From positions 1 through 17,869 of IMG/VR virus record IMGVR_UViG_3300005977_000075: a stretch of 17,869 nucleotides of DNA; one strand, written 5' to 3'. Below are positions 3,770 to 17,869 of this stretch, in pieces. The notes under the pieces were generated by a model, which worked only from the letters and a program-made list of their open reading frames with translations, made no database searches and was not told the origin of the DNA. Positions within the stretch are counted from its first letter, which is position 1, and each line of letters begins with the position of its first letter. The position numbers and the translations under genes are program-made.

Positions 3770-3842
3770 GGTAGAATATGGGGAGAAAGATGGGGAGAAA
3801 GCGGGTAGAATATGGGGAGAAAGATGGGGAGAAAGCGGGTAG
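3770..3842 (+). repeat. 34-bp direct repeat x2 (GGTAGAATATGGGGAGAAAGATGGGGAGAAAGCG) containing ATGGGGAGAAAG x4
   Basis: Read directly: 3770-3803 is identical to 3804-3837, followed by a partial GGTAG. Confidence 0.95.
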
Positions 3843-6472: not shown

Positions 6473-6571
6473 TATTACTAAAGCGAACGACAATACTCGC
6501 CACTCGCCCTTCTAGGTATTTTGTTGGTCAATGTTGTCGATGTCGATTATCTCTTATCTCTTATCTTTTTC

Positions 6572-6600
6572 CACCTGAGACCCCGTCCATAAGTGCGGGG
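6572..6600 (+). mobile_element. Degenerate IS200/IS605-like right-end hairpin remnant
   Basis: CACCTGAGACCCCGTCC...GCGGGG shares 17 identical nt with the reverse complement of 16275-16311. Confidence 0.5.
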
Positions 6601-6665
6601 AGCTAAGTATAAATATGAATTTTGAAAAACGATTCGTTTTACCAAGTTCATGGTAAATCGTTTAG

Positions 6666-6785
6666 TAAATAGTTTAATATTGTTTCGCAAATATCGTTGT
6701 CTATATCTTTTACGTCAGTGAGAGATCCTCTAAATAGTTTAATATCGTTTCGCAAATATCATTGTCTATATATTTTTCGTCAGTG
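6666..6785 (-). repeat. 55-bp imperfect direct repeat (6666-6720 and 6731-6785, 4 mismatches) duplicating the 3' end of ORF 6710-7081
   Basis: Read directly; period 65 bp. Confidence 0.92.
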
Positions 6786-7081
6786 GCAGACCCCCAATGT
6801 CCTCGTAATTTGCACACTCCTCTACTATATACTAAATCTATGTTAGGGCCTCCAAAAGTTATACCAATGTCGAAGCCTACTAGTTCTCTACTTGGTAAAG
6901 AGGTGTAAAGTATTATGTCGATGGCGTCGTCTATAACCTCTTGTAACTTGTCCTGCTGGAATTTGTCCTTAAGTTCCTTTGCTATAAAGTCCAAATTTTT
7001 TTCTAATGCTGTACGGTTATCTGCAGAATTTATCAAAATATCTAACATGTCCTCTTTATTTTGACCAAATTCCTGCGACAT
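6710..7081 (-). CDS. Acidic hypothetical protein, 123 aa, with a FGGPNI...GHWG motif
   Basis: Leaderless-type gene: CTTAAATA TATA about 22 nt upstream, preceded by AAACAGCTGTTT. Function unknown. Confidence 0.8.
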   Translation of the reverse strand: MSQEFGQNKEDMLDILINSADNRTALEKNLDFIAKELKDKFQQDKLQEVIDDAIDIILYTSLPSRELVGFDIGITFGGPNIDLVYSRGVCKLRGHWGSATDEKYIDNDICETILNYLEDLSLT

Positions 7082-13946: not shown

Positions 13947-14058
13947 TCCTGGTCAAACATATGTATGCCAAAACTGGTATTTAAACCTTTTTGCCTAACC
14001 AGTTAGACAAAAAGTAGGGTGATGGAAAAACAGCTGTTGGAGCTATTTTCTCTTTCGT

Positions 14059-14101
14059 CCCACCTCAAGGAGGGAGACGTCTGCCCCCTCAACCCCTGCC
14101 C
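14059..14101 (-). mobile_element. Degenerate IS200/IS605-like left-end remnant abutting the TATA box of the RHH gene
   Basis: CCCACCTCAAGGAGGGAGACGTCTGCCCCCTCAACCCC aligns with CCCACCTCACGGAGGAGGACTTACGCCCCCTTAACCCC in the 14457-14557 element; followed by TATTTAAA. Confidence 0.55.
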
Positions 14102-14132
14102 TATTTAAAAATAATCTGGCAAGAACATAATC

Positions 14133-14450
14133 ATGGGAAAAAGAATCGTCTCGTTTAGAATAGAACGTAGTGCACTTGAATTGATTGATTCTAAGAACAA
14201 GAATAGATCTTCAGTGATGAGAGACGCTATAAACTACATTATCCGGGAAGGTATAACAAAGGACGATATACTAATAGCCCTATCCATCCCGATAGACGAG
14301 AAGAGGCAAACAAGTGTTAAAATCGATGAAGAGACGTTAGACAGGCTAAAACTAATTGCGGAAGAGAACCATATACAAGTAAGTGAACTCATGAGAATCG
14401 CAATATGGAAACTCCTCCTGAAAGACGGAGCAGTTAGTGTGCCCCAGTGA
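14133..14450 (+). CDS. Tandem ribbon-helix-helix (CopG-like) transcription regulator
   Basis: Two RHH units: RIVSFRIERSALELID...NRSSVMRDAINY and RQTSVKIDEETLDRLKLIAEENHIQVSELMRIAIWKLL. Leaderless, TATA at 14102-14109. Confidence 0.88.
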   Translation: MGKRIVSFRIERSALELIDSKNKNRSSVMRDAINYIIREGITKDDILIALSIPIDEKRQTSVKIDEETLDRLKLIAEENHIQVSELMRIAIWKLLLKDGAVSVPQ

Positions 14451-14456
14451 ACTTTT

Positions 14457-14557
14457 GTGAACTACCCCGCCCTAATGGGGCTTCCTGCTTCAAAGGTGGC
14501 TATCCATCCCCCACCTCACGGAGGAGGACTTACGCCCCCTTAACCCCCCAGAAACTA
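14457..14557 (-). mobile_element. Miniature non-autonomous IS200/IS605-like element (left end plus right end, about 100 bp, no ORF)
   Basis: On the minus strand: TTTAA, then GGGGTTAAGGGGGCGTAAG...GGGGATGGATAGCC (left-end-like), then GAAGCAGGAAGCCCCATTAGGGCGGGGTAGTTCAC (right-end hairpin ending TCAC). Near-identical copy at 17036-17146. Confidence 0.7.
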
Positions 14558-14595
14558 TTTAAACACTGCTCAAACATATGTTTAAGTGACACCAG

Positions 14596-14814
14596 TTGAA
14601 CCCGTTTGCAGTATTCTTTATCGCAGTTTTTGTCCTAATACCGTTTTTATTGCTTATCGTAGTTTTGGCAAACAACTTTACCGGATTATTTTATAGCATA
14701 GATGGGAGTTCATTTACACCAGTGGCAAATACTGTAAACTACATGTTGTGGGCATTCGTAGTTTTGGCAATAGCTTTGGTTGCAGTCCTGATAATATACA
14801 AGAAATATACGTGA
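14596..14814 (+). CDS. Small two-helix membrane protein, 72 aa; possible minor capsid protein
   Basis: Two hydrophobic helices, an N-F-T sequon in the linker and a basic C-terminus (IIYKKYT), as in spindle-virus capsid proteins. Confidence 0.65.
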   Translation: MNPFAVFFIAVFVLIPFLLLIVVLANNFTGLFYSIDGSSFTPVANTVNYMLWAFVVLAIALVAVLIIYKKYT

Positions 14815-14849
14815 ACTGACCGTCCTAAGGGAACCCTCGCCCTTTACGG
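14811..14849 (+). mobile_element. Truncated tnpB 3'-end/right-end-like fragment
   Basis: GTGAAC...CGTCCTAAGGGAACCCTCGCCCTTT resembles the Sulfolobales orfB/tnpB terminus (coding RPKGTLAL, from memory); the second hairpin arm is missing. Confidence 0.45.
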
Positions 14850-14922
14850 TAGACCCAAAATCACCTCCTTGAAATTAAAAGAGGAAAATAATTAATAAAT
14901 AATTCTAGATTTTAAAAAAAGT

Positions 14923-15564
14923 TTAACTTTTATTTGTTAAAGCTTCTAAATCAGGCAACGTATGTTCTATATCGTATAATACGCTGTCTATCTCATCTAG
15001 TAAAATGCTTAATACCTCTAATTTATTACTGTCGTCCAGTTCATCATAAAAGCCCTCCCAATAACCTATTTCCTCATAATAGCCATAATTTTTCACTCCG
15101 AAGACGGTATCGCCTATCTTTTTGTACCAATAATCCAAATCATCACCACTTAATGGCTTCTTGTTTTGTAATGCACGCTTGATTGCATCAGCGAATTTAA
15201 CTAATACCTCGTCGTAAGCTTGTAGACGTCTAGCTTTACTGGCGTCATCAAGCTCATCGTTTTGCACTATATTTTGATATAACATCTGTAATTCATCGCC
15301 GAGAGAACCACCGGCTTTTAGGCTCATCGTTTCCTTCCACAAACTCTCATATTCCTTTTTCACCTCGTCCCAGAAGTTGTCTGAATTTTCAATCGCTTTG
15401 TCGAGATCTTCAGCTTCATTCTCATCAAGGTATGCATCTACAAAAACGTCCAATTGGTCTGGGTTGTGGTCTGTCAAGCACCCGAGTGGTGTGTCGCCAC
15501 TAATATTTTCACAATAATTGGCTACTCTGTCCATCACGAGTTGAGCTACATCACGTGGTTCCAT
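14923..15564 (-). CDS. Highly acidic hypothetical protein, 213 aa
   Basis: About 50 D/E versus about 20 K/R by hand count. Own promoter (AAACAGCTGTTT-GAGAAAG-CTTATATT) and T-rich downstream tract. Confidence 0.88.
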   Translation of the reverse strand: MEPRDVAQLVMDRVANYCENISGDTPLGCLTDHNPDQLDVFVDAYLDENEAEDLDKAIENSDNFWDEVKKEYESLWKETMSLKAGGSLGDELQMLYQNIVQNDELDDASKARRLQAYDEVLVKFADAIKRALQNKKPLSGDDLDYWYKKIGDTVFGVKNYGYYEEIGYWEGFYDELDDSNKLEVLSILLDEIDSVLYDIEHTLPDLEALTNKS

Positions 15565-15638
15565 TTTTATTCCCGATACAAAATTCCTGAGTCGGGAATA
15601 TAAGGCTTTCTCAAACAGCTGTTTTATTTATTTAGGTA

Positions 15639-15733
15639 CGGACTTCCTCCCCTCACTGGTAGGGCGAGGGAAGGCTAAGCATTTCCTATGCTTCTCCGGA
15701 GGGTGAGGTTTTCCATCCCCCTTAACCCCCAAC
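15639..15733 (-). mobile_element. Miniature IS200/IS605-like element of a second subtype (degenerate)
   Basis: Minus strand: TTTATAAA, then GGGGGTTAAGGGGGATGGAAAACC (left-end-like), then CCCTCGCCCTACCAGTGAGGGGAGGAAGTCCG (right-end-like; compare GGGGAGGAAGTCAG). Confidence 0.5.
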
Positions 15734-15813
15734 TTTATAAACTTTCCGTTTCAAATCAATCGAAGTGCGGGGTTTTTAAGTATTTCCTGTGTACTCTAAT
15801 ATTAGGACTGGTC

Positions 15814-16278
15814 ATGACAATTGAGGACAGAATTTATCGTTTAATTAAACTTTTGCTTTACACTGCAAAAGAGGAGAATGCAAAAGTCACTCCGACCAAA
15901 CTGCAGAAGATTTTCTTTTTACTTGAGAAAGAGAAGGGAATTAATCTAGGACTGGATTTTGAGCCTTGGTTCTTCGGTGCTTACTCGTCGAAATTACAAG
16001 ATTACGTCCATAAACTAATCGCAATAGGAGACGTCGACGTTGTAAAGGAGAAAAAAGTAAGAGATCCATTGAGCGGAGCAATAATAGGGTACGTAAGGAA
16101 TCATGTTTTAAACAGCGAATTTAAGCCTGAGGAACAAGACAAGGAGATTGAGGCATTTTTCAGGGAATGGGTCAAGAAGAGCAAAGACGAGATCATGAAC
16201 TACGCGTATCGGAAATACCCTGAATACTTTGAATATTCTAAGATTAGAGATCACATTTTTAGCAAGTTGAAAAGGTAA
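15814..16278 (+). CDS. SocA/Panacea (DUF4065)-like antitoxin, 154 aa (start revised to ATG 15814)
   Basis: VTPTKLQKIFFLLE...FEPWFFGAYS and YAYRKYPE match the KLQKLLY...F-x-W-x-x-GP pattern. The longer start at 15688 lies inside the mini-element. TTTTTAAG TATA at about 15773. Confidence 0.75.
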   Translation: MTIEDRIYRLIKLLLYTAKEENAKVTPTKLQKIFFLLEKEKGINLGLDFEPWFFGAYSSKLQDYVHKLIAIGDVDVVKEKKVRDPLSGAIIGYVRNHVLNSEFKPEEQDKEIEAFFREWVKKSKDEIMNYAYRKYPEYFEYSKIRDHIFSKLKR

Positions 16279-16311
16279 ACTACCCCGCCCTCACGGACGG
16301 GGTCTCAGGTG
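16275..16311 (-). mobile_element. IS200/IS605-like right-end hairpin overlapping the stop codon of the SocA-like gene
   Basis: Minus strand: CACCTGAGACCCCGTCCGTGAGGGCGGGGTAGTTTAC, with hairpin CCCCGTCC/GGGCGGGG; the same end as the 14457 and 17036 copies. Confidence 0.65.
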
Positions 16312-16513
16312 TCAAAAGATGAAGTCGACTTTTGTTAACTTTCTCTTTTTCCGTTTTACGTTATTTCTGCCTAACTGGTTGGGCTGAAACTGTCCCTATT
16401 CACTTCTCTCTTGTTTTTCTCCCATTTTTCTCCCAGTTGTTTTTCTCCCAGACCAGGAATAGTGAAGCGAAAAGCTTATTAATACCTCAAACAGATGTTT
16501 TACACGAAGCAAA

Positions 16514-16984
16514 ATGTCAGTTTCGGTAATCGTTCCGTCCGCAAAAGCAACAGGAGCAGGTGGTAAGAAAGCAAAAATGTTCAAGGTAATTAACGTTCAT
16601 ACACCAAATGCAAATAGTGTTCATATACCAAAAATAAAGAAAGCGACTAGAATTCATGATCCAGGAGTAGCAGGGTCGTTAGTCAGAGTAACGTTTGGAA
16701 CCAACGGGTTTGACATTCCAACAATAGCAATAGCCCTCTTGATAGTCGGTGTAATAATAGGACTATCAGGTTTAATTCTCTCTATCTTCGCCACAGCTAC
16801 TGCCTCAGCAATAAGCAATCCGTCACCAGGAACATTAGCGTATAACTTGACGCACCCGCTGGTAAACGGTATGGTATCGTTCTTCAGCTTCTTCCCAACG
16901 CTATACGTATTGCTCGGTGTGACCGGAATAGTACTCATCGCGGCAGGTATAATATCCATAATAATGGAGAAATTCAAGACTTAA
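16514..16984 (+). CDS. Probable major capsid protein of a spindle-shaped virus (basic N-terminal region plus two long hydrophobic helices)
   Basis: Basic N-terminus of about 65 aa, helix 1 DIPTIAIALLIVGVIIGLSGLILSIF, linker with an N-L-T sequon, helix 2 FFPTLYVLLGVTGIVLIAAGIISII, then a basic tail. This is the architecture of fusellovirus VP1 and bicaudavirus capsid proteins. Strong BRE-TATA (GAAAAG-CTTATTAA) and T-rich terminator. Confidence 0.75.
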   Translation: MSVSVIVPSAKATGAGGKKAKMFKVINVHTPNANSVHIPKIKKATRIHDPGVAGSLVRVTFGTNGFDIPTIAIALLIVGVIIGLSGLILSIFATATASAISNPSPGTLAYNLTHPLVNGMVSFFSFFPTLYVLLGVTGIVLIAAGIISIIMEKFKT

Positions 16985-17035
16985 AACTCGAAGTCAAACA
17001 TGTGTTTTTTTCCGCGAATTCACTTTCTTCTTCTT

Positions 17036-17146
17036 GTGAACTACCCCGCCCTAATGGGGCTTCCTGCTTCAAAGGTGGCTATCTTCAAGGGGGCTATCCA
17101 TCCCCCACCTCACGGATGGAGTCTTACGCCCCCTTAACCCCTTTCT
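17036..17146 (-). mobile_element. Miniature non-autonomous IS200/IS605-like element, second copy
   Basis: Near-identical to 14457-14548 plus a 15-bp internal insertion (TTCAAGGGGGCTATC); abuts the TTTTAAAA TATA of the next gene. Confidence 0.7.
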
Positions 17147-17174
17147 TTTAAAACTCTTCTGTTAAGATATTAAC

Positions 17175-17869
17175 ATGGCACTGAAAACACCGTCTTCAAA
17201 CATAAGCTTTACAAATACGGTACACCCACACTCAGCTCAACCTGTTACAGCTTTCTCGTTATTTCAAATGCTAGCATCTCCACCATATGTTTACATTTTC
17301 ATCGCTCTAGGCATACTAATTATAGTATTCATTGTCGTATACGTAGCGTTCAGAAGGTCGTATATGAAAGACCCAATAAGAGGAGGGCTAATAAGACAAA
17401 TTCGTCGCTCTAAGAATAGTGACGTTGTAGTCGTGAACGTCGACATATCTACTAGGTCTGCTCAACTGTACCTAGGTGAAAAATTATCGCCGTCGTTGTA
17501 CACAGTCCATGACCCAGTTACAGGCGAAGAGCTAATTGTCCCAGTCACCTCGGAATCCATGGTAGGGATGATACAATACGGGAATCTACATAGACCGTTG
17601 TTAATCACTATAAGGAAAAACAACACAATGCCGTATGCGATAAGGTTAGAGACGTTAGAAACATCGATACCTGTGTCTGAGTATGATACGGCAGAACCAG
17701 AATTATTAGCACAGTTGGCTAAGGTCAAAAAGATGATTACTGGTGCCATAACGTTATCTCCTACCACAAAACTTTCTATCGCTGTTGACCCTAAATTATT
17801 ACTTAACCGTCGGCTATCGCAAGAGTTGGAGATATTGAGTACAATACCCACGACGGTTAAGGAGATGAA
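17175..17869 (+). CDS. Membrane-anchored protein (partial, runs off the window); possibly virion/assembly-related
   Basis: Manual translation MALKTPSSNISFTNTVHPH...YVYIFIALGILIIVFIVVYVAFRRSYMKDPIRGG..., open to the edge. One TM followed by RR; TATA about 21 nt upstream. Confidence 0.85.
   Translation, partial: MALKTPSSNISFTNTVHPHSAQPVTAFSLFQMLASPPYVYIFIALGILIIVFIVVYVAFRRSYMKDPIRGGLIRQIRRSKNSDVVVVNVDISTRSAQLYLGEKLSPSLYTVHDPVTGEELIVPVTSESMVGMIQYGNLHRPLLITIRKNNTMPYAIRLETLETSIPVSEYDTAEPELLAQLAKVKKMITGAITLSPTTKLSIAVDPKLLLNRRLSQELEILSTIPTTVKEM

What the first reader, a model, noticed from the sequence alone, without database searches (positions are those of the whole stretch)
14447..17154. Mini-elements sit between stop codons and TATA boxes: domesticated punctuation or stand-alone TnpB guide RNAs
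Seen: each left end abuts a quasi-palindromic TATA-like sequence (TATTTAAA 14102 and 14556, TTTATAAA 15734, TTTTAAAA about 17147). In three cases this is the likely TATA box of the next plus-strand gene. Right-end termini coincide with or closely follow stop codons (GTAAAC contains the TAA at 16276; GTGAAC is repeated at 14447 and 14457 around the RHH TGA). Established: Sulfolobus TnpB uses a TTTAA TAM, which is also the insertion target, and its omega-RNA derives from the right end plus flanking DNA. Inference: TTTAA targeting explains the preference for TATA boxes. The same TATA read in reverse could transcribe a short left-end/right-end RNA whose 3' flank is antisense to the upstream gene end. 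That RNA could act as a minimal guide or decoy for host TnpB, an antisense regulator, or simply a terminator/stabilising hairpin. The elements look shorter than typical omega-RNAs, so the guide idea is speculative.
Basis: partly seen in the sequence, partly recalled or inferred. Interest (0 to 1): 0.62.

Follow-up and report, generated by a model that had tools for sequence, protein, structure and literature searches.

The report
Mini transposon relics at viral promoters
The GC-rich mini-elements are gene-less remnants of an IS200/IS605 (TnpA/TnpB) transposon that inserts next to TTTAA, which is also the core of this archaeal virus's TATA boxes. That explains where they sit, and nothing shows that they act as guide RNAs or as gene punctuation.

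Summary
The window is a fragment of a Sulfolobus monocaudavirus-like virus. It carries six short GC-rich elements between 14048 and 17147, and a seventh at 6563.

[quoted passage not shown] That element is complete (tnpA + tnpB) in SMV3 and tnpB-only in a related viral contig.

Two copies are intact minimal elements of about 100 nt: B (14457-14558) and F (17036-17147). Each sits exactly 3' of TTTAA on the minus strand, with no target duplication. Precise empty sites exist in close relatives (L249 for B; SMV1 and SMV4 for F).

The others are older relics with an RE only, an LE only, or degenerate ends.

This virus's TATA boxes contain TTTAA. Only the observed orientation leaves the TATA-to-start spacing intact. 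That accounts for the link with TATA boxes.

The link with stop codons is mostly genome compactness. The GTGAAC at 14447 and the stop codon at 14812 are ancestral.

B, F and E keep about 36-39 nt of RE. The published Sulfolobus TnpB guide RNA needs at least 113 nt more, so a guide role is unlikely.

Transcript contigs of the gene upstream of F end at a T7 run before the element.

These are new, very small members of the known SMN1/PATE kind.

The parts
14048..14104 (-). A: LE-only relic (LE tip, GGGGTTGAGGGGG block, inner hairpin). It abuts TTAAA at 14105-14109, which is the TATA box of the RHH gene.
   Evidence: 87% identity over 38 nt to the LE of the tnpB element in L011. The same relic lies at the same promoter in L249, L061 and, more decayed, in SMV4.
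14447..14452 (+). GTGAAC containing the RHH stop TGA. This is ancestral gene sequence, not transposon DNA.
   Evidence: It is present unchanged at the empty site in L249. Other relatives have TAAAC here. A DNA contig variant reads GTAAAC.
14457..14558 (-). B: intact 102-nt minimal element, RE (about 14457-14494) plus LE (about 14493-14558).
   Evidence: RE terminus 100% and LE 91% identical to the parent IS. An exact empty site exists in L249...GTGAACTTTT|TTAAAC.... The same filled site is in L236 and L237.
14559..14563 (-). TAM of B (TTTAA on the minus strand), part of the TATA box TATTTAAA at 14556-14563.
   Evidence: TAM identity comes from PMC11043419.
14811..14879 (-). C: RE-only relic with a diverged terminal hairpin.
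   Evidence: The hairpin core is 93% identical over 29 nt to the tnpB 3' end/RE of the annotated IS200-605 element of SMV1. Other strains carry a canonical GTGAACTACCCCGCCCTAAC joined at 14847. 14847-14879 is a high-copy repeat in the metagenomes.
15639..15736 (-). D: degenerate mini-element. Its LE lacks the inner hairpin. Its RE is of the type ending ...GGGGAGGAAGTC. It abuts TTTAT.
   Evidence: 16 nt identical to the LE. The reverse complement of its left end resembles the RE end of the SMV1 IS. It has no match in the phage collection and about zero depth in the RNA libraries.
16275..16323 (-). E: solo RE (9-bp terminal hairpin, end GTTTAC). Its reverse complement supplies the TAA stop of gene 15814-16278.
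   Evidence: 25/25 nt identical to the parent RE. Fold z-score -3.1. A DNA variant lacks 16269-16327 and uses its own TGA. It is a high-copy repeat with unit edges at 16275 and 16323.
17004..17010 (+). T7 run after gene 16514-16984, the likely archaeal terminator, upstream of F.
   Evidence: An RNA-library contig ends at 17015, and summed RNA-library contig depth falls about tenfold across F. The run is also present in SMV1 and SMV4, which lack F.
17036..17147 (-). F: intact 112-nt minimal element. It is like B plus a 15-nt internal tandem duplication.
   Evidence: LE 93% and RE terminus 100% identical to the parent IS. Empty sites in SMV1 and SMV4 read ...cttcttctt|ttaaaac.... The same filled site is in L053.
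17148..17152 (-). TAM of F (TTTAA on the minus strand), part of the TATA box TTTTAAAA at 17146-17153, which lies 29 nt before the ATG at 17175.
6563..6606 (+). G: degenerate E-type RE hairpin in the opposite orientation, in an intergenic region.
   Evidence: Inverted repeat I1, 38 nt and 87% complementary to E. Sequence read.

Best explanation
The mini-elements are non-autonomous deletion derivatives and decayed single ends of IS200/IS605-family insertion sequences. They belong to the Sulfolobus IS605 group with a TTTAA target and a TTCAC right-end terminus. Their top strand is the window's minus strand.

A Y1 transposase (TnpA) supplied in trans, by the host or by a co-resident virus or plasmid, inserts them as single-stranded DNA immediately 3' of TTTAA without a target duplication.

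This virus's TATA boxes have a TTTAA(A) core. The virus is about 85% coding. So the insertions that survive are those at a TATA box in the orientation that puts the element upstream of the box, leaving the TATA-to-start spacing untouched.

Stop codons lie only a few bases upstream of the next TATA box. The RE terminus therefore ends up next to a stop codon. In one case (E) its reverse complement GTAAAC provides the stop.

The elements are selfish passengers with at most incidental effects. B and F are recent and probably still mobile. A, C, D, E and G are relics.

Shown: homology to the parent IS, TAM adjacency, absence of target duplication, and presence/absence polymorphism.
Inferred: mobilisation by TnpA in trans, and selection as the cause of the orientation and the promoter bias.
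For: Parent elements:
- L011 carries TTTAA|LE, a 412-aa TnpB (Pfam OrfB_IS605, Cas12f TNB, HTH; E=1e-39 to ISDra2 TnpB structures) and an RE ending ...GGGCGGGGTAGTTCAC.
- SMV3 carries the same ends around a Y1 tnpA and a frameshifted tnpB.

Homology: B and F LE are 91-93% identical over 55-56 nt. The RE termini of B and F (17 nt) and of E (25 nt) are identical to the parent.

Exact empty sites: L249 for B; SMV1 and SMV4 for F. A DNA-run variant lacks E.

Target: 14 of 16 distinct LE sites in the family have (N)TTAA 5-10 nt before the G-run.

Literature:
- TTTAA insertion site and TAM, conserved TTCAC end (PMC11043419, PMC10640517).
- SMN1 (320 bp) is mobilised by an IS200/IS605 transposase (PMC3718332) and was recovered in the pyrEF promoter region (PMC1919505).
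- SMN2 copies and an IS200/IS605 element are known in SMV1 (PMC3839810).

Promoter bias: 3 of 3 observed against 12 of 96 available sites.

The RHH promoter was hit repeatedly: the A relic, a different mini-element in L250, and the full IS about 110 nt upstream in SMV3.

The LE occurs in 27 of 47 Sulfolobaceae genomes, with dozens of copies in some.
Against: - No tnpA or tnpB is in the window, although the record is only about 33% complete.
- The B/F-type element is known at only two sites. No contiguous copy was found in 47 Sulfolobaceae genomes.
- The LE tips of B and F differ (ATAGTTTCT versus AAGAAA), so one is not a simple precise copy of the other.
- The terminal RE hairpin of B and F is weak, about 4 bp.
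- Only 6 of 16 family insertion sites are promoter-proximal, so the TATA link is a tendency rather than a rule.
- Neutrality is inferred, not measured.
Confidence: 0.8

Rival explanations
1. Stand-alone TnpB guide (omega/reRNA) or decoy. A minus-strand transcript through the LE and RE reads into the flank and programmes, or titrates, a host or viral TnpB.
For: - The RE ends in the conserved TTCAC after which the guide starts in SisTnpB7.
- The flank after the RE of B and of F is identical to the TTTAA-adjacent sequence of the empty sites in L249 and SMV1, as IS605 homing logic predicts.
- PATEs are said often to encode omega RNAs used in trans (PMC10055086).
- The 320-nt SMN1-like relatives keep an LE TATA-like box. 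They also keep a strongly conserved interior of about 220 nt with 15 predicted pairs showing compensatory change.
Against: - B, F and E keep only about 36-39 nt of RE. reRNA activity drops sharply when the CDS-derived part is below 113 nt, and the full length is about 176 nt.
- B and F lack the LE promoter region.
- No RNA family matched at a meaningful score.
- No TnpB is in the window.
- D has about zero RNA-library depth.
Confidence: 0.05
2. Domesticated punctuation. The hairpins act as terminators, 3'-end stabilisers or insulators, and the LE tip supplies promoter-upstream (BRE-like) sequence for the next gene.
For: - The position between stop codon and TATA box recurs, including for SMN1 in pHVE14.
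- The A relic has stayed at the RHH promoter across lineages whose RHH gene 5' regions are about 83% identical at DNA level.
- The LE tip of B turns ...CTTTTTTAAAC into ...AGAAACTATTTAAAC, which is closer to the TATTTAAA seen at other promoters of the window.
- An RNA-library contig runs from the RHH gene through B to 14548.
Against: - B and F are absent from close relatives whose stops, T-runs and TATA boxes are intact.
- The contig of the gene upstream of F ends at the T7 run before F.
- The A relic has diverged more than the adjacent coding sequence (by eye about 65% against 83% identity; sequences).
- The elements at the RHH promoter differ between lineages.
Confidence: 0.08
3. The fragments are chiefly recombination scars or hot spots. 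Repeated IS ends mark and promote the exchange of gene cassettes between viruses and plasmids.
For: - D and E bracket gene 15814-16278. That gene is shared with Sulfolobales virus YNP1 and betalipothrixviruses and is missing at this place in SMV1 and SMV3.
- Homology to SMV1 resumes right after E.
- Many contig joints and loose ends fall at element edges.
- The B copy in L237 carries F-type LE variants, which suggests gene conversion.
Against: - This does not explain the exact TTTAA-adjacent, duplication-free insertions of B and F.
- Contig joints at repeats are also expected from assembly alone.
Confidence: 0.07

Closest known systems
SMN1 / SMN2 (Sulfolobus 'mobile non-inverted repeat' elements; 320-bp MITE-like elements mobilised by IS200/IS605 transposases)
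   Same: - Same LE, with the GGGGGTTAAGGGGG block and nested hairpins, and same RE terminus ...GGGCGGGGTAGTTCAC.
- Same TTTAA-adjacent insertion.
- A 327-nt relative is present in related viral contigs. It matches pHVE14 and a second S. islandicus plasmid at 90% and ATSV at 94% over its whole length.
- SMN2 copies are already reported in SMV1.
   Different: - B and F are only 102 and 112 nt.
- They lack the conserved interior of about 220 nt and the LE-internal TATA-like box.
- Their RE is the single-hairpin type found in a Sulfolobus MAG.
- This junction type was found only in this virus lineage.
PATEs (palindrome-associated transposable elements; gene-less IS200/IS605 derivatives)
   Same: LE and RE hairpins, no terminal inverted repeats, no target duplication, no gene, dependence on TnpA in trans (PMC10055086).
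   Different: PATEs are described as often carrying a whole omega RNA. These minis do not. The setting here is an archaeal virus genome with a TATA-box target.
IS605-type elements of S. islandicus REY15A (SisTnpB1 / SisTnpB7)
   Same: TTTAA insertion site and TAM. RE ending in TTCAC, followed by the guide. A conserved 38/39-nt RE.
   Different: Those are full elements with tnpA and/or tnpB and an reRNA of about 176 nt. The window has neither gene.
IS200/IS605 element annotated in SMV1 (classified as ISC1467 in PMC3839810)
   Same: The hairpin core of C and the RE-side terminus of D resemble its RE.
   Different: It has different LE and RE terminal sequences (...GGAGGAAGTCA), so it is a second lineage of the same family.

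Membership tests
IS200/IS605 non-autonomous derivative (PATE / SMN-type) | Both ends homologous to the LE and RE of an element that encodes a Y1 TnpA and/or TnpB | tested here: met
   L011 (tnpB only) and SMV3 (tnpA + tnpB) carry the same LE and RE. B and F LE are 91-93% identical, and the RE termini are identical.
IS200/IS605 non-autonomous derivative (PATE / SMN-type) | Insertion immediately 3' of a fixed pentanucleotide (TTTAA), with no target-site duplication and no terminal inverted repeats | tested here: met
   B against the empty site in L249 is exact. F against SMV1 and SMV4 is consistent, with a 5-nt ambiguity. Family-wide, 14 of 16 sites fit.
IS200/IS605 non-autonomous derivative (PATE / SMN-type) | Subterminal imperfect hairpins at both ends on the top strand | tested here: met
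   The nested LE hairpin is kept in F (z -2.75) and kept with one mismatch in B. The RE hairpin has 9 bp in E and the parent but only about 4 bp in B and F. So this holds clearly for the LE and weakly for the RE of B and F.
IS200/IS605 non-autonomous derivative (PATE / SMN-type) | Presence/absence polymorphism at orthologous sites (mobility) | tested here: met
IS200/IS605 non-autonomous derivative (PATE / SMN-type) | Excision and integration by a cognate TnpA in trans | not testable with these tools
   No tnpA is in the window. Candidate sources exist in SMV3 and in Sulfolobaceae genomes.
TnpB omega RNA / reRNA gene | Complete scaffold: at least 113 nt of tnpB-3' derived sequence plus the 38/39-nt RE (PMC11043419) | tested here: not met
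   B, F and E retain about 36-39 nt of RE only.
TnpB omega RNA / reRNA gene | RE ends in TTCAC and is followed by a flank that matches a TAM-adjacent target | tested here: met
   Sequence. The flanks of B and F equal the TTTAA-adjacent empty sites in L249 and SMV1. This follows from the insertion geometry itself.
TnpB omega RNA / reRNA gene | Top-strand transcript through the RE into the flank; association with TnpB | not testable with these tools
   Only contigs of the RNA runs were available, so there is no strand or end information.
SMN1 proper | Element of about 320 bp with a conserved interior | tested here: not met
   B is 102 nt and F 112 nt. The interior is missing.
Transcription terminator / domesticated intergenic punctuation | Transcripts end at the element, and the element is conserved at orthologous positions | tested here: not met
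   The contig upstream of F ends at the T7 run, at 17015. B and F are absent from L249, SMV1 and SMV4. The RNA evidence is weak because it comes from contigs.

The most novel reading that the evidence does not exclude
IS605-derived mini-elements in archaeal viruses could serve as homing or gene-drive cassettes, or as weapons between viruses. An RNA reading out of the RE of B or F would carry a guide identical to the TTTAA-flanked empty site of co-circulating genomes that lack the element (L249, SMV1, SMV4). A host or viral TnpB could then cut competitor genomes or convert them by recombination. For the 100-nt minis this would require a far smaller functional scaffold than any so far described, or help from the LE part. 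For the 320-nt SMN1-like relatives in sister viruses it needs no such assumption.
Probability: 0.06. Interest if true: 0.7.

Novelty: new member of a known kind. Interest (0 to 1): 0.33.

Why it matters
This gives a clean, sequence-level example of a TAM/target motif (TTTAA) that coincides with the archaeal TATA-box core. That coincidence funnels IS200/IS605 derivatives into viral promoters. One orientation is tolerated because it leaves the promoter intact.

It also defines about the smallest apparently mobile derivative seen for this Sulfolobus family: about 66 nt of LE plus about 36 nt of RE, with exact empty sites. That is useful for delimiting what TnpA needs.

It warns annotators that GC-rich hairpin islands in Sulfolobales virus intergenic regions are transposon relics, not regulatory inventions.

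It does not reveal a new kind of system.

Tried and rejected
- Rfam scan of the whole window at E<=1. The only hit was a chance-level one, 21 bits against a 58.6 gathering score, on A.
- Phage-collection search with D. No match.
- Search for the B/F junction in viral and metagenome contigs. It returned only the two known sites.
- 47 Sulfolobaceae genomes. No contiguous B/F-type copy.
- tblastn of the TnpB C-terminus against the minis and the 327-nt relative. Only the last 18 codons are recognisable in the 327-nt element, and nothing in B or F.
- Survey of 175 RE termini for long open frames ending in the GTRAAC stop. About a quarter do, but the set is dominated by GC-rich haloarchaeal genomes where long spurious frames are common. 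I draw no conclusion.
- The idea that RE termini were selected to donate stop codons is rejected for the RHH gene and for C. Those stops are ancestral.
- Metatranscriptome runs. Only contigs were available, so strand and ends are unknown, and depth over the repeats sums many copies.
- Berkner & Lipps 2007 and Greve et al. 2004, the original SMN1 papers, are not held. What I say about SMN1 comes from papers that cite them.
- A pair-count control on the SMN1-like alignment failed because my structure string was the wrong length. I did not repeat it, so the covariation support rests alone.


Full report
**Context.** The window is the whole of an IMG/VR viral record, linear and about 33% complete. 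Its right part is collinear with Sulfolobus monocaudaviruses SMV1, SMV3 and SMV4 (Bicaudaviridae), at 77-87% DNA identity. It is 38.8% G+C. The elements in question stand out as C-rich islands of 55-60% G+C in intergenic DNA.

**Observation.** The repeat finder recovers the families:
- B and F share 50 identical nt followed by a 55-nt block at 91% identity.
- A, B and F share a 39-nt block.
- B, E and F share GTRAACTACCCCGCCC.
- E has an inverted partner at 6563-6600.

**Identity.** I searched the two most conserved cores in IMG/VR. In several related contigs both cores lie about 300 nt apart. There they bound a 327-nt element present in near-identical copies with different flanks. In two contigs they lie 1.4-1.7 kb apart.
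- In L011 the interval is TTTAA, then an LE, a 412-aa ORF and an RE whose last bases are ...GGGCGGGGTAGTTCAC. The ORF is a TnpB. It matches Pfam OrfB_IS605, Cas12f-like TNB and HTH_OrfB. It also matches ISDra2 TnpB structures at E=1e-39 over residues 14-365.
- In SMV3 the same ends enclose a Y1 transposase (PF01797, E=7e-41) and a frameshifted tnpB.
- BLAST of these elements against the window maps LE positions about 10-69 onto 14493-14548 (91%) and 17087-17141 (93%). It maps weaker pieces onto 14059-14096 and 15717-15732. It maps the RE terminus onto 14457-14473, 16278-16302 and 17036-17052, at 100%.

So the elements lie on the minus strand. The GTGAAC end is the RE, and the ...CCCCCTTAACCCC end is the LE.

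**Literature match.** The S. islandicus IS605 elements insert at TTTAA, which is also the TnpB TAM. Their RE ends with an invariant TTCAC, and the guide begins immediately after it. The conserved RE is 38/39 nt (PMC11043419, PMC10640517).

**Insertion anatomy.**
- For B, a contig whose neighbouring 72-aa protein is 97% identical (L249) has ...CCCCAGTGAACTTTT|TTAAACACTGC.... The window has 102 extra nt (14457-14558) exactly at the bar. On the minus strand that is TTTAA|LE...RE|flank with no duplication, which is the IS200/IS605 signature.
- For F, SMV1 and SMV4 have ...cttcttctt|ttaaaac... and the window has 112 extra nt (17036-17147). A 5-nt microhomology leaves the boundary formally ambiguous. 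Placing it next to TTTAA matches the LE-tip length in the rest of the family.
- Across 16 distinct LE sites, 14 have (N)TTAA 5-10 nt before the G-run.
- A DNA-run variant lacks 16269-16327 (element E) and ends the gene with its own TGA at almost the same codon.

**What each copy is.**
- B and F are intact minimal elements, with about 66 nt of LE and about 36 nt of RE. F also has a 15-nt internal tandem duplication. Their single-hairpin RE is of the type found in many copies in a Sulfolobus MAG.
- E is a solo RE and a high-copy repeat in the source community.
- C is an RE-only relic. Its hairpin core is 93% identical to the RE region of the IS200-605 element annotated in SMV1.
- D has an LE that has lost the inner hairpin, and an RE-side terminus resembling that second IS lineage.
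- A is an LE-only relic.
- G (6563-6606) is a degenerate E-type hairpin.
- The window encodes no TnpA or TnpB.

**Why TATA boxes.** Twelve of the 96 TTTAA sites in the window lie 18-45 nt upstream of a start codon in the non-disruptive orientation. Most of them read (T)ATTTAA(A), which is the viral TATA consensus. A, B and F all sit at such sites. An insertion 3' of the TTTAA on the other strand would separate the TATA box from the start site. An insertion anywhere else would mostly hit coding sequence, which makes up 85% of the window. Target specificity is shown here. Selection as the filter is an inference.

Three further observations support a promoter tendency:
- SMN1 in pHVE14 sits 19 nt after a stop codon, and its TTAAA is 35 nt before the next ATG.
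- SMN1 was isolated in the pyrEF promoter region of S. islandicus (PMC1919505).
- The RHH promoter has been hit more than once. The A relic is in the window, L249, L061 and SMV4. A different mini-element is in L250. The full IS lies about 110 nt upstream in SMV3.

The tendency is not absolute. Only 6 of 16 family sites are promoter-proximal.

**Why stop codons.** In relatives without B, the RHH gene ends ...TAAAC or ...TGAAC, followed by a T-run that merges with the next TATA box. Any element entering that TATA box therefore lands about 10 nt after the stop. The GTGAAC at 14447 is ancestral. The stop at 14812 is at the same codon in L250, SMV4 and SMV3, which lack C. Only E really donates a stop. 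I treat the stop-codon link as a by-product of genome compactness.

**Guide-RNA idea.** SisTnpB7 needs about 176 nt of reRNA, and trimming the CDS-derived part below 113 nt sharply reduces activity. B, F and E keep about 36-39 nt of RE and none of that part. B and F also end their LE before the TATA-like TTTTATAG that precedes tnpB in the parent and is kept in the 327-nt element.

By contrast, ten SMN1-like copies of 71-100% identity keep a strongly conserved interior. The consensus fold has 85 pairs, 15 of them with compensatory changes. Those longer relatives could well be stand-alone omega-RNA carriers, an idea already in the literature for PATEs (PMC10055086).

The flanks after the RE of B and F equal the TTTAA-adjacent empty sites in L249 and SMV1. 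That follows from the insertion geometry and is not independent evidence.

**Punctuation idea.** RNA-library contigs cover the gene at 16514-16984 and stop at 17015, just after a T7 run (17004-17010). That run is also present in SMV1 and SMV4. Summed RNA-library contig depth falls about tenfold across F. One RNA-library contig runs from the RHH gene through B to 14548. This suggests read-through rather than termination at the hairpins. D has about zero RNA depth. These are contigs, so the evidence is weak and has no strand information.

**Distribution and novelty.** The LE occurs in 27 of 47 Sulfolobaceae genomes, and SMN1-like copies of about 320 nt are common there. The B/F junction was found only at the B and F sites of this virus lineage. 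SMN2 elements and an IS200/IS605 element in SMV1 are published. This is a new, unusually small member of a known kind.

**Unexplained.**
- The LE tips of B and F differ although the rest is at least 91% identical.
- The B copy in L237 carries F-type LE variants, which suggests gene conversion between copies.

Noticed in passing
window 707, 1911, 2382, 4937, 5710, 14568, 15609, 16485 (19-nt units): The palindrome CAAACAGCTGTTTG (core variants CATATG and CAGATG) occurs at least 8 times. By eye, several copies lie between a TATA box and a start codon. It is also present at homologous places in SMV1, SMV3 and SMV4. It is a candidate operator for a viral regulator, for example the RHH protein encoded at 14133-14450.
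   Followed up: no
window 3598, 4997, 5870, 13990, 16366: A second palindromic promoter-region motif, TGCCTAAC-N4-GTTAGGCA, occurs five times. It is conserved upstream of the homologue of gene 16514 in SMV1, SMV3 and SMV4.
   Followed up: no
Genome-contig loci L093-L212: The 16-nt RE terminus GGGCGGGGTAGTTYAC occurs in more than 120 genome contigs of Halobacteria, methanogens, Marsarchaeota, Nitrososphaeria and Thermoproteota, often at contig ends. This suggests a deeply conserved RE/omega-RNA 3' end in an archaeal IS605/TnpB clade.
   Followed up: partly
L015, L026, L029, L044 (327-nt element); L234:1242-1567 (ATSV); L235:601-925 (pHVE14): SMN1-like 327-nt elements occur in several copies in sister viral contigs and in Acidianus tailed spindle virus, where part of the element is annotated as a hypothetical protein. 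The interior is strongly conserved among copies of 71-100% identity and has a predicted multi-helix fold. It is a possible stand-alone omega-RNA gene.
   Followed up: partly
window 15814-16278: This gene is a cassette shared with Sulfolobales virus YNP1 (annotated there as a conserved conjugative plasmid protein) and with betalipothrixviruses. It is absent at this place in SMV1 and SMV3. It is bracketed by the transposon relics D and E.
   Followed up: partly
L250 about 940-1090 (upstream of the RHH homologue): A different mini-element of about 100 nt sits at the same RHH TATA box. It has a two-hairpin RE, and its other end resembles the terminus of the SMV1 IS. This is an independent hit on the same promoter.
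   Followed up: no
window 3770-3837 and 6666-6793: A perfect 34-nt tandem duplication, and a 63-nt direct repeat at 89% identity spaced 65 nt apart.
   Followed up: no
L015 around 5460 (reverse strand): GTTCAC|GTGAAC: the flank next to the RE terminus of a 327-nt element ends in GTTCAC, so the junction is palindromic, as if two RE termini met tail to tail.
   Followed up: no
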